Assembly (NCBI RefSeq): GCF_006345805.1
Contig: NC_043010.1
Coordinates: forward strand, 12,338,001-12,402,000
Direction: 5' to 3'
Source: Octopus sinensis
Lineage: Eukaryota
DNA: 64,000 nt
The translations under genes and the position numbers were made by a program. Below the pieces are notes generated by a model, which saw only the letters and a list, made by a program, of their open reading frames with translations, made no database searches and was not told the DNA's origin. Each line of letters opens with the position of its first letter. Position 1 is the stretch's first letter. Of this stretch, positions 4,085 through 4,262 are shown in pieces.

Positions 4085-4262
4085 TCGTTAGCCACAACAC
4101 ACATTTTTTTTCTCTCCTTGTTTTCTGTGTCCATTTCTGTAGAAGAGCGTAGGCTCGAAACGTAAAAGACTTTTACTATTCCTGAGCTATATACTAATAC
4201 ATCTATTTGTTTTGTACACCACCCATCTTCGTCTTTTGTTTTTATCCGTAAACTCTCCCTAT
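4085..4262 (+). mobile_element. ~180-bp Penelope-like (pLTR-type) mini-element carrying a hammerhead-like motif
   Basis: Same two ends as the copy at 12174-12350 (minus); TA-rich flanks; motif at 4133-4168. Confidence 0.7.
4133..4168 (+). ncRNA. Minimal type I hammerhead-like motif, U6 variant
   Basis: ATTT-CTGTAGA-A-GAGC(GTAG)GCTC-GAAA-CGT-A-AAAG: helix II GAGC/GCTC, palindromic helix III ACGT, GUA triplet, helix I TTT/AAA. Confidence 0.55.

What the first reader, a model, noticed from the sequence alone, without database searches (positions are those of the whole stretch)
4085..4262. ~180-bp mobile mini-element with a conserved non-canonical (U6) hammerhead, three copies
Seen: three copies (4085-4262 +, 12174-12350 -, 28375-28562 -). 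The first two share both ends exactly; all are non-coding and sit in TA-rich tracts. Each has a centred minimal type I hammerhead fold (helix I CTTT/AAAG, helix II GAGC/GCTC, self-complementary helix III ACGT, GUA triplet). All three read CUGU at core positions 3-6 (CTGTAGA, CTGTAAA, CTGTTGA) instead of CUGA, plus an extra A before helix II. Established: minimal hammerheads with palindromic helix III occur in Penelope-like LTRs and retrozymes and cleave as dimers; A6 is normally invariant. Inference: a retrozyme-like or pLTR-derived non-autonomous family whose master copy carried an A6U core, so either a natural catalytic variant or a family that spread after losing cleavage.
Basis: partly seen in the sequence, partly recalled or inferred. 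Interest (0 to 1): 0.75.

Follow-up and report, generated by a model that had tools for sequence, protein, structure and literature searches.

The report
Short mobile element with crippled hammerhead
Three copies of a roughly 190-base non-coding mobile element that homes into TA repeats carry a minimal hammerhead ribozyme motif of the kind found in Penelope-like retroelements. One normally invariant core base is changed, so this is most likely an ordinary decayed relative of a known class, not a new ribozyme.

Summary
The three copies are real: 4084-4259 (+), 12176-12363 (-) and 28376-28573 (-). They are 88-89% and about 80% identical, and a diverged fourth relative lies at about 20850-21003.

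Copy 2 is a clean insertion into the internal (TA)n tract of an abundant SINE-like repeat. Copy 1 sits at the same place in a different SINE-like copy and lacks 15 nt at its 5' end. All copies are flanked by (TA)n, have no terminal inverted repeats and share a fixed 3' end.

The hammerhead-like motif is real. It has the hallmarks of the minimal hammerheads of Penelope-like elements (PLEs): an unpaired base between positions 9 and 10.1, a G10.1-C11.1 pair, a palindromic CG at 15.2/16.2, a 4-5 bp helix I and a GUA triplet.

The inferred ancestor differs from the consensus core only at A6U. A motif that good is expected 0.017 times per window by chance.

The same window holds three exact-core minimal hammerheads of other families, against 0.04 expected.

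Best reading: a non-autonomous PLE-derived retroposon that kept spreading with an impaired ribozyme. No covariation test or genome-wide census was possible. It is a new member of a known kind, of modest interest.

The parts
4084..4259 (+). Copy c1 of the element (about 175 nt, lacks the first ~15 nt)
   Evidence: nhmmer and blastn. Alignments A1 and A2. Ends in ...CGTAAACTCTCCC followed by (TA)n.
4133..4168 (+). c1 hammerhead-like motif: AUUU CUGUAGA A GAGC-GUAG-GCUC GAAA CG U A|AAAG. U6 is at 4140; the putative cleavage site is after A4164.
   Evidence: Direct reading. Descriptor hit with 1 core mismatch and a 3-bp helix I.
12176..12363 (-). Copy c2, full length (188 nt), inserted in the internal (TA)n of a SINE-like repeat
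   Evidence: Alignment A2 against the intact paralogue 3163-3572. blastn.
12266..12301 (-). c2 hammerhead-like motif: CUUU CUGUAAA A GAGC-AUAG-GCUC GAAA CG U A|AAAG. U6 is at 12294; G8 is changed to A at 12292.
   Evidence: Direct reading. Descriptor hit at 2 mismatches.
28376..28573 (-). Copy c3, full length (about 198 nt), from an older or different subfamily (~80% identical to c1 and c2)
   Evidence: nhmmer and blastn. Alignment A1. Shares its 5' end with c2.
28473..28508 (-). c3 hammerhead-like motif: CUUU CUGUUGA A GAGC-AUAG-GCUC AAAA UG U A|AAAG. U6 is at 28501; G12 is changed to A at 28484; C15.2 is changed to U at 28480. The last two are both CpG transitions.
   Evidence: Direct reading. 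Descriptor hit at 2 mismatches.
20850..21003 (+). Diverged relative. It reads AUUU CUGACAA A GACC..GCUC GAAA CG U U|AAAU, has a broken helix II, and is cut at its 3' side by an inverted SINE-like repeat.
   Evidence: nhmmer E = 0.0025 and blastn E = 0.009. Sequence. Alignment A4.
11929..12537 (-). SINE-like repeat interrupted by c2: head 12364-12537, remainder 11929-12167
   Evidence: blastn against the intact copy. Alignment A2.
3923..4074 (+). Head of a different SINE-like copy. Its (TA)n tract received c1, and its 3' half is absent.
   Evidence: Alignment A2. It is 63% identical to the head next to c2.

Best explanation
The three copies belong to a short (about 190 nt), non-coding, non-autonomous retroposon family that derives from the hammerhead-bearing terminal region (pLTR or 3' end) of a Penelope-like element.

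Proposed mechanism:
- The element's RNA is copied into the genome in trans by a PLE reverse transcriptase and GIY-YIG endonuclease that cuts (TA)n microsatellites. This step is inferred.
- Reverse transcription starts at the fixed 3' end and sometimes stops short, which explains c1's missing 15 nt.
- The master sequence carried a PLE-type minimal type I hammerhead that was intact except for A6 changed to U.
- Every tested substitution in the CUGA turn strongly lowers cleavage, so the ribozyme was most likely badly impaired. The family went on transposing regardless, which implies that efficient self-cleavage was dispensable for its spread.
- The further losses of G8 (c2) and of G12 and C15.2 (c3, both at CpG) are neutral decay after insertion.

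Shown: homology of the copies, insertion into a SINE-like repeat, the (TA)n context, the absence of terminal inverted repeats and of tandem copies, the motif letters and the chance statistics.

Inferred: PLE parentage, trans-mobilisation and loss of catalysis.
For: Mobility and targeting:
- c2 is a precise insert between ...TATGTATATATA and TATATATATATTTATG... of a SINE-like repeat that is uninterrupted at 3163-3572.
- The SINE-like heads next to c1 and c2 are 63% identical, while the elements are 88% identical.
- All three copies are flanked by TA tracts on both sides, a context that covers 3.7% of the window.
- c1 and c2 share the 3' end. c2 and c3 share the 5' end. c1 is 15 nt shorter.
- There are no inverted repeats except the TA flanks and no tandem arrangement.

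Motif:
- The ancestor reconstructed from the three copies is CUUU CUGU(A/U)GA A GAGC RUAG GCUC GAAA CG U A AAAG, with a single core mismatch.
- A match that good is expected 0.017 times per window.
- The motif has the bulged base between 9 and 10.1, G10.1-C11.1, palindromic 15.2-16.2 and a 4-5 bp helix I. Cervera and de la Pena list these as features of PLE min-HHRs that emerged without being in their descriptor (PMC4209133).

Context:
- Exact-core min-HHRs of other families occur at 29859-29913 (+), 7171-7211 (-) and 42217-42255 (+). That is 3 observed against 0.04 expected.
- The first two have the same layout as c1-c3: hammerhead, then 40-95 nt, then a TA-type microsatellite.

Literature:
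- Neptune and Naiad PLEs prefer (TA)n, carry HHRs near their 3' ends, and Naiads thrive without canonical HHRs (PMC8557442).
- Most genomic min-HHRs are solitary.
- Animal retrozymes derive from PLE pLTRs (bioRxiv 10.64898/2026.07.22.740005).
- Single and double mutants in the CUGA turn, other than the C3/G8 swap, have low activity (PMC9901934).
- A natural A6C variant cleaves at less than 0.1 per min (PMC3088659).
Against: - No PLE reading frame or pLTR matching the element is in the window, and the source genome could not be searched, so parentage is not demonstrated.
- Only three copies plus one weak relative exist, so there is no statistical covariation (267 of 500 shuffles do as well).
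- The hammerhead block is only modestly better conserved than its flanks (86-92% against 70-88%).
- Helix II is 4 bp, shorter than the 6-8 bp typical of PLE min-HHRs.
- The A6 reading in the relative at 20886 depends on an alignment choice. MAFFT and the covariance model place a 1-nt gap at position 6 instead.
- Rfam hammerhead models give no hit. A control shows that they also miss the exact-core motif at 29859, so this negative is uninformative.
Confidence: 0.65

Rival explanations
1. The hammerhead resemblance is coincidental. The element is an unrelated short retroposon or other repeat that happens to contain a GC hairpin followed by GAAAC and preceded by CUGU.
For: - No present-day copy has an intact core.
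- There is no covariation and no Rfam hit.
- Descriptor matches with two mismatches are expected 0.30 times per window.
Against: - The reconstructed ancestor has one mismatch only, expected 0.017 times per window.
- It shows four PLE min-HHR features that are independent of the core boxes.
- It shares layout and TA-microsatellite context with exact-core min-HHRs in the same window.
Confidence: 0.13
2. U6 is a tolerated natural core variant. The RNA still self-cleaves, for example as a dimer through the ACGU palindrome or with host factors, and cleavage is part of the element's life cycle.
For: - U6 persisted in the master lineage across two subfamilies that differ by about 20%.
- The rest of the ancestral motif is intact.
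- The hammerhead block has no indels and is somewhat better conserved than its flanks.
- Rare active core variants exist in nature (PMC3088659).
- Even canonical PLE min-HHRs cleave poorly in vitro and may need cofactors.
Against: - Comprehensive mutagenesis found low activity for all CUGA-turn mutants except the C3/G8 swap, and no rescue by a second mutation (PMC9901934).
- The natural A6C variant is slow.
- No second-site change that could compensate is visible.
- Conservation of the block is not statistically distinguishable from that of the flanks with three copies.
Confidence: 0.07
3. The copies are not a dedicated short element. They are ordinary, severely 5'-truncated 3' ends of a full-length autonomous PLE that carries U6 in its pLTR.
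For: - Most genomic min-HHRs are thought to be truncated PLEs.
- c1 is truncated relative to c2 and c3.
- The exact-core motifs at 7171-7211 and 29859-29913 look like short 3' fragments.
Against: - c2 and c3, which belong to different subfamilies, start at the same base to within 1-2 nt, directly after (TA)n. Random truncation of a kilobase-scale element would rarely give that.
- No homology between the copies extends beyond about 198 nt.
Confidence: 0.15

Closest known systems
Minimal type I hammerheads (min-HHR) in the pLTRs of metazoan Penelope-like elements (Cervera and de la Pena 2014, PMC4209133)
   Same: - Open helix I of 4-5 bp.
- Unpaired base between A9 and 10.1.
- G10.1-C11.1 pair.
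- No helix III loop, but a palindromic 15.2-16.2, so two copies can pair.
- Mostly solitary genomic copies.
- High sequence variability.
   Different: - A6 is U in every copy.
- Helix II is 4 bp rather than 6-8 bp.
- No flanking PLE reading frame was seen.
- The unit has a defined length of about 190 nt.
Animal non-LTR retrozymes (Cervera and de la Pena 2020, PMC7229834; Li et al. 2026, bioRxiv 10.64898/2026.07.22.740005)
   Same: Short (51-972 bp), AT-rich, non-coding, hammerhead-bearing, non-autonomous elements thought to derive from PLE pLTRs. Monomeric copies occur.
   Different: Retrozymes are defined by head-to-tail tandem repeats with canonical, active type I hammerheads and by circular RNAs. 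Here the copies are solitary, the motif is of the minimal type with a mutated core, and no RNA data exist.
(TA)n-targeting Neptune and Naiad PLEs (Craig et al. 2021, PMC8557442)
   Same: Strong insertion bias for (TA)n microsatellites, so that target-site duplications cannot be read. Naiads proliferate without a canonical hammerhead.
   Different: Those are 3-4 kb autonomous elements with RT and GIY-YIG endonuclease. This is a 190-nt non-coding unit.
Natural A6C hammerhead of bacteriophage Bcep176 (Perreault et al. 2011, PMC3088659)
   Same: A natural hammerhead with a substitution at the normally invariant A6.
   Different: That one is a full three-helix ribozyme with measured, though low, activity (under 0.1 per min). 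Here the change is to U, in a minimal motif, and is untested.
Sm-alpha and Sj-alpha SINE-like retroposons of schistosomes with hammerheads (recalled from memory; canonical S. mansoni hammerheads are mentioned in PMC4209133)
   Same: A short interspersed non-coding retroposon that carries a type I hammerhead.
   Different: Those carry canonical, active hammerheads and pol III promoter boxes. Here no tRNA-like head was found, and a T8 run lies near the 5' end of the sense strand.

Membership tests
PLE-type minimal hammerhead (min-HHR) | All conserved core bases present: C3 U4 G5 A6 N7 G8 A9 ... G12 A13 A14, A15.1-U16.1, H17 | tested here: not met
   U6 in c1, c2 and c3. In addition A8 in c2 and A12 in c3. 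The reconstructed ancestor fails only at position 6.
PLE-type minimal hammerhead (min-HHR) | [quoted passage not shown] | tested here: met
   An extra A is present in all three copies and in the relative at 20886. The feature is listed in PMC4209133.
PLE-type minimal hammerhead (min-HHR) | G10.1-C11.1 pair closing helix II | tested here: met
   GAGC/GCUC is invariant in c1-c3.
PLE-type minimal hammerhead (min-HHR) | Palindromic 15.2-16.2 (no loop 3), allowing a dimeric helix III | tested here: met
   ACGU in c1 and c2. AUGU in c3, which is wobble-compatible and is a CpG transition.
PLE-type minimal hammerhead (min-HHR) | Short helix I (4-5 bp) and UH cleavage triplet | tested here: met
   Helix I is 5 bp in c2, 4 bp in c3 and 3 bp in c1. 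GUA is present in all.
PLE-type minimal hammerhead (min-HHR) | Covariation or compensatory changes within a genomic family | tested here: inconclusive
   With 4 sequences there is one possible compensatory pair (C-G against A-U in helix I). 267 of 500 shuffles do as well.
PLE-type minimal hammerhead (min-HHR) | Location in the terminal repeat of a PLE with an RT/GIY-YIG reading frame | not testable with these tools
   There is no RT-like reading frame in the window. No eukaryotic genome collection was available, and scans of other collections were empty.
PLE-type minimal hammerhead (min-HHR) | Self-cleavage, as a dimer | not testable with these tools
   Needs in vitro transcription. The literature predicts low activity for A6 mutants.
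Animal non-LTR retrozyme | Head-to-tail tandem repeats, each unit with a hammerhead | tested here: not met
   Tandem Repeats Finder shows no array at any copy. Each copy is solitary between TA tracts.
Animal non-LTR retrozyme | Canonical type I hammerhead with loop-loop contacts; linear and circular RNAs | tested here: not met
   The motif is of the minimal type, with no loop 1 and a 4-nt loop 2. The RNA species are not testable here.
SINE (pol III retroposon) | tRNA-, 5S- or 7SL-derived head and a LINE-like or A-rich tail | tested here: not met
   ARAGORN finds nothing and Rfam gives no tRNA, 5S or 7SL hit. A T6-T8 run about 25-35 nt into the full-length sense strand (about 20 nt into truncated c1) would stop pol III. 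The element ends at (TA)n, not in an A-rich tail.
MITE / cut-and-paste DNA transposon | Terminal inverted repeats | tested here: not met
   The only inverted repeats are the flanking TA tracts themselves.
Helitron | 5'-TC, 3'-CTRR with a subterminal hairpin, inserted between A and T | tested here: not met
   Full-length copies start GTCGC or TTGCC and end CTCTCCC, with no 3' hairpin.
Rfam hammerhead families | Score at or above the gathering threshold | tested here: not met
   There is no hammerhead hit even at E <= 10. The exact-core min-HHR at 29859 is missed too, so these models do not cover the minimal type.

The most novel reading that the evidence does not exclude
The U6 core is a functional natural hammerhead variant. 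In the dimeric minimal architecture, or with a host cofactor, uridine at position 6 would support cleavage, and the family's persistence across two subfamilies would reflect selection on an active ribozyme. That would break the rule that A6 is invariant.
Probability: 0.06. Interest if true: 0.65.

Novelty: new member of a known kind. Interest (0 to 1): 0.3.

Why it matters
What hammerheads do for Penelope-like elements is still unclear. A non-autonomous family that kept inserting over a long period with a single crippling core change would be one more natural indication that efficient self-cleavage is not needed for PLE-type mobilisation. Naiad PLEs, which lack canonical hammerheads, already suggest this. 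In practice it also shows two things. Descriptor searches that demand an exact core miss whole families of PLE-derived elements. In this genome, the (TA)n tracts inside an abundant SINE-like repeat are a frequent landing site. If U6 turned out to be active, which is unlikely, it would be a new tolerated core variant.

Tried and rejected
Attempts to collect more copies, which is the decisive test:
- Two pattern scans of metagenome contigs found nothing.
- One scan of viral contigs found nothing.
- Two scans of prokaryotic genome contigs gave nothing and then one 19-mer hit in an Aurantibacter MAG. That hit does not extend and is about what chance gives.
- Protein-database searches with a reading frame across the element and with a consensus frame of the abundant SINE-like repeat found nothing. 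The aim was to pull in contigs of the same species; the collection evidently holds no such ORFs.
- A full-text search for the element and SINE-like sequences in papers found nothing.

Other tests that were negative or uninformative:
- Rfam at gathering threshold and at E <= 10 gave only microsatellite-driven miRNA look-alikes. The control at 29859 shows that this negative is uninformative.
- A covariance model of the motif, run with filters off, found no member beyond the four it was built from.
- MITE and Helitron readings are rejected: no terminal inverted repeats, wrong termini.
- A tRNA-derived SINE reading is rejected.
- The retrozyme reading is rejected for lack of tandem copies.
- MFE folding of monomers and dimers was not discriminating for so small a motif. 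Only c2 folds into helices I and II on its own.
- No homology could be detected between the c family and the exact-core elements at 29859 or 7171 outside the core boxes.
- The bacterial-type promoter and terminator scan was irrelevant and empty.

Full report
**The observation**

The three copies exist. A profile built from them finds 4084-4261 (+), 12174-12350 (-) and 28382-28561 (-) with E-values of 7e-56 to 3e-47. By blastn, c1 and c2 are 89.4% identical, and c3 is 80.0-80.5% identical to either (alignment A1). A fourth, much weaker relative lies at about 20886-21039 (+) (nhmmer E = 0.0025, blastn E = 0.009). The window is 29-40% G+C, dense in microsatellites and has no convincing protein-coding frame. 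From memory, the abundant SINE-like repeat resembles cephalopod (octopus) repeats; I could not test that.

**Boundaries and mobility**

The 3' end is the same in c1 and c2: ...CGTAAACTCTCCC, followed directly by (TA)n. It is recognisable in c3.

c2 (GTCGCTGTGATAGAT-CGTTAGCC) and c3 (TTGCCATGATTGAT-CACTATCC) both begin directly after a TA tract. They carry about 15 nt that c1 lacks. Full length is therefore 188-198 nt, and c1 is 5'-truncated.

c2 is a clean insertion. Its flanks are the head (12364-12537) and the remainder (11929-12167) of an approximately 400-bp SINE-like repeat. That repeat is uninterrupted at 3163-3572, and the break lies inside its internal (TA)n(TG)n tract (alignment A2). 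The repeat has at least 12 near-full copies in the window.

c1 follows the head of another copy of this repeat at the same relative place. The two heads are only 63% identical, while the elements are 88% identical. These are therefore independent insertions, not one composite unit that was later copied.

All three copies have TATATA within 14 nt on both sides, a situation that holds for 3.7% of window positions.

There are no terminal inverted repeats apart from the TA tracts. None of the copies lies in a tandem array. ARAGORN finds no tRNA-like head. No homology between copies extends beyond the unit.

A fixed 3' end, a variable 5' end and homing to a microsatellite point to target-primed reverse transcription, with the hammerhead strand as the RNA sense strand.

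**The motif**

Read on the element strand, the three copies are:
- c1: AUUU CUGUAGA A GAGC-GUAG-GCUC GAAA CG U A|AAAG
- c2: CUUU CUGUAAA A GAGC-AUAG-GCUC GAAA CG U A|AAAG
- c3: CUUU CUGUUGA A GAGC-AUAG-GCUC AAAA UG U A|AAAG

. All share U at position 6. c2 has lost G8. c3 has lost G12 and the C of the ACGU palindrome. c1 has lost the closing pair of helix I.

G8 and G12 are the catalytic guanosines, and no mutant of them is active (PMC9901934). Both c3 changes are transitions at CpG, as expected for decay after insertion.

Taking the majority state at each position, the common ancestor had a motif that was perfect except for U6.

**Chance**

I wrote a descriptor after the published min-HHR definition:
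- helix I of at least 4 bp;
- CUGANGA;
- 0-1 unpaired base;
- helix II of at least 4 bp;
- GAAA;
- 0-6 self-complementary bases;
- UH.

I ran it on 240 dinucleotide-preserving shuffles of the window, with these expected counts per window:

| Descriptor setting | Expected hits per window |
|---|---|
| Exact core | 0 |
| At most one core mismatch | 0.017 |
| At most two core mismatches | 0.30 |
| One mismatch, helix I of 3 bp | 0.07 |

The reconstructed ancestor belongs to the 0.017 class. The present copies belong only to the looser classes.

With four sequences there is no usable covariation. There is one possible compensatory pair in helix I, and 267 of 500 shuffles score as high.

The 36-nt motif block is 86-92% identical between copies and has no indels. 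The flanks are 70-88% identical. This is suggestive but not significant.

Rfam finds no hammerhead at gathering threshold or at E <= 10. It also finds none for an exact-core minimal hammerhead in the same window, so this negative carries no weight.

**Context inside the window**

The same kind of search with exact cores and slightly laxer stems gives three hits, against 0.04 expected (400 shuffles):
- 29859-29913 (+): CUGAUGA, helix II of about 10 bp, ACAGCUGU palindrome, GUA.
- 7171-7211 (-): CUGAUGA, bulged U, G10.1-C11.1, ACUUUAAAGU palindrome, GUC.
- 42217-42255 (+): the known U3-A8 covariant core, ACAUGU palindrome, GUC. It lies at the centre of a foldback.

The first two have the same layout as c1-c3. 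A pyrimidine-rich or microsatellite 5' side is followed by the hammerhead, then 40-95 nt, then a TA-type microsatellite.

Hammerhead-bearing fragments of several families therefore populate this region. The c family is one of them, with a changed core.

The relative at 20886 reads CUGACAA A GACC..GCUC GAAACGUU AAAU. Under one alignment it keeps A6, which would make U6 a derived state. An equally scoring alignment, chosen by MAFFT and by the covariance model, puts a 1-nt gap there. An ancestral A6 is therefore suggested, not shown.

**Comparison with what is known**

Cervera and de la Pena (PMC4209133) defined minimal type I hammerheads in the terminal repeats of Penelope-like elements. They listed features that emerged without being part of their search:
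- a conserved G10.1-C11.1 pair;
- palindromic 15.2-16.2;
- a short helix I.

All are present here. Helix II is shorter than their typical 6-8 bp. They also report that most such motifs are solitary, highly variable and poorly active in vitro even with a canonical core.

Craig et al. (PMC8557442) report strong (TA)n insertion bias for Naiad PLEs, and hypothesise that a linker motif mediates the same bias in Neptune PLEs. They also report HHRs near PLE 3' ends, and very successful Naiads that lack canonical hammerheads.

Animal non-LTR retrozymes are tandem repeats with canonical hammerheads (PMC7229834) and are now traced to PLE pLTRs (bioRxiv 10.64898/2026.07.22.740005). The present copies fail the tandem criterion.

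On position 6:
- a natural A6C hammerhead cleaves at less than 0.1 per min (PMC3088659);
- a complete single- and double-mutant map found low activity for every CUGA-turn mutant except the C3/G8 swap, with no second-site rescue (PMC9901934).

**Most likely explanation**

This is a non-autonomous, roughly 190-nt derivative of a PLE terminus. A PLE RT and endonuclease that targets (TA)n mobilises it in trans. Its master carried A6U and kept producing insertions across two subfamilies. Efficient self-cleavage was therefore dispensable.

My confidence in the whole chain is about 0.65. Taken separately:
- a mobile (TA)n-homing short family: about 0.9;
- the motif is a genuine min-HHR derivative: about 0.8;
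- U6 is impaired rather than functional: about 0.9, given that the motif is genuine.

Rivals:
- coincidental resemblance (0.13);
- random truncated ends of a full-length PLE rather than a dedicated short element (0.15). The shared c2/c3 start argues against this;
- an active U6 variant (0.06-0.07).

**Novelty and verdict**

This is a new member of a known kind. The A6U state is unusual, but it is best read as a tolerated loss of function in a class whose ribozymes are already weak and variable. Interest is modest (0.3).

The decisive step is a census of all genomic copies and a search for the parent PLE. It could not be run because no collection holding this genome was reachable.

Noticed in passing
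window 29859-29913 (+): Exact-core minimal type I hammerhead of another, single-copy element. It reads GUCU CUGAUGA, then a helix II of about 10 bp, GAAA, CAGCUG, U A|AGAC, followed about 50 nt later by a CATA/TA microsatellite. No such motif appeared in 240 shuffles, and Rfam does not detect it. It lies 1.3 kb from c3 on the opposite strand.
   Followed up: partly
window 7171-7211 (-): A second exact-core minimal hammerhead. It reads AGU CUGAUGA U GGC..GUC GAAA CUUUAAAG U C|ACU, with the bulged base, G10.1-C11.1 and a 10-nt palindrome. It is wedged between a CA-type microsatellite and a (TA)n tract about 40 nt downstream, and looks like a very short PLE 3' fragment.
   Followed up: partly
window 42043-42412 (motif at 42217-42255 +): A long foldback with nested inverted repeats (outer arms about 42043-42130 and 42330-42412). 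Its centre matches a minimal hammerhead with the U3-A8 covariant core, an ACAUGU palindrome and GUC. It could be a real variant or a by-product of the palindrome.
   Followed up: partly
window 3163-3572 and at least 11 further copies (e.g. 24788-25192, 30832-31226, 47645-48037, 57079-57474): A very abundant SINE-like repeat of about 400 bp, roughly one copy per 5 kb. It has a conserved head, an internal (TA)n(TG)n microsatellite, a conserved 3' half and an A-rich tail. Neither ARAGORN nor Rfam sees a tRNA in it. Its internal TA tract received two of the three element copies.
   Followed up: partly
window 50118-50156 (+): A hammerhead-like match with two core mismatches (CUGAUAA ... AAAA). It is within the chance expectation of 0.30 per window.
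   Followed up: no
window 22880-23426: Three head-to-tail copies of a 183-bp unit, 95% identical. My descriptor finds no hammerhead core in it.
   Followed up: no
window 59061-61727 and 62199-62312: A large minisatellite of about 38 copies of a 70-bp unit (35-bp half-units, AGGATGCTGGGAGATTAAAGTTTGATAGGAGGGAC-like). A short inverted piece of the same unit lies about 500 bp downstream.
   Followed up: no
window 6878-7135, 31464-32032, 33325-33759, 52987-53720: Another dispersed repeat family, recognisable from recurring translated strings (…SDLAVFLQLDALPNANHS…GAFYVPP…). It contains a 68-bp tandem at 31733-31888. Its identity is not established.
   Followed up: no
window 8600-11600: About 3 kb of trinucleotide-rich low-complexity sequence (TGG, ATG and ATT runs) with strong GC skew. 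It includes a 180-bp duplication that is 99% identical (9391-9770).
   Followed up: no
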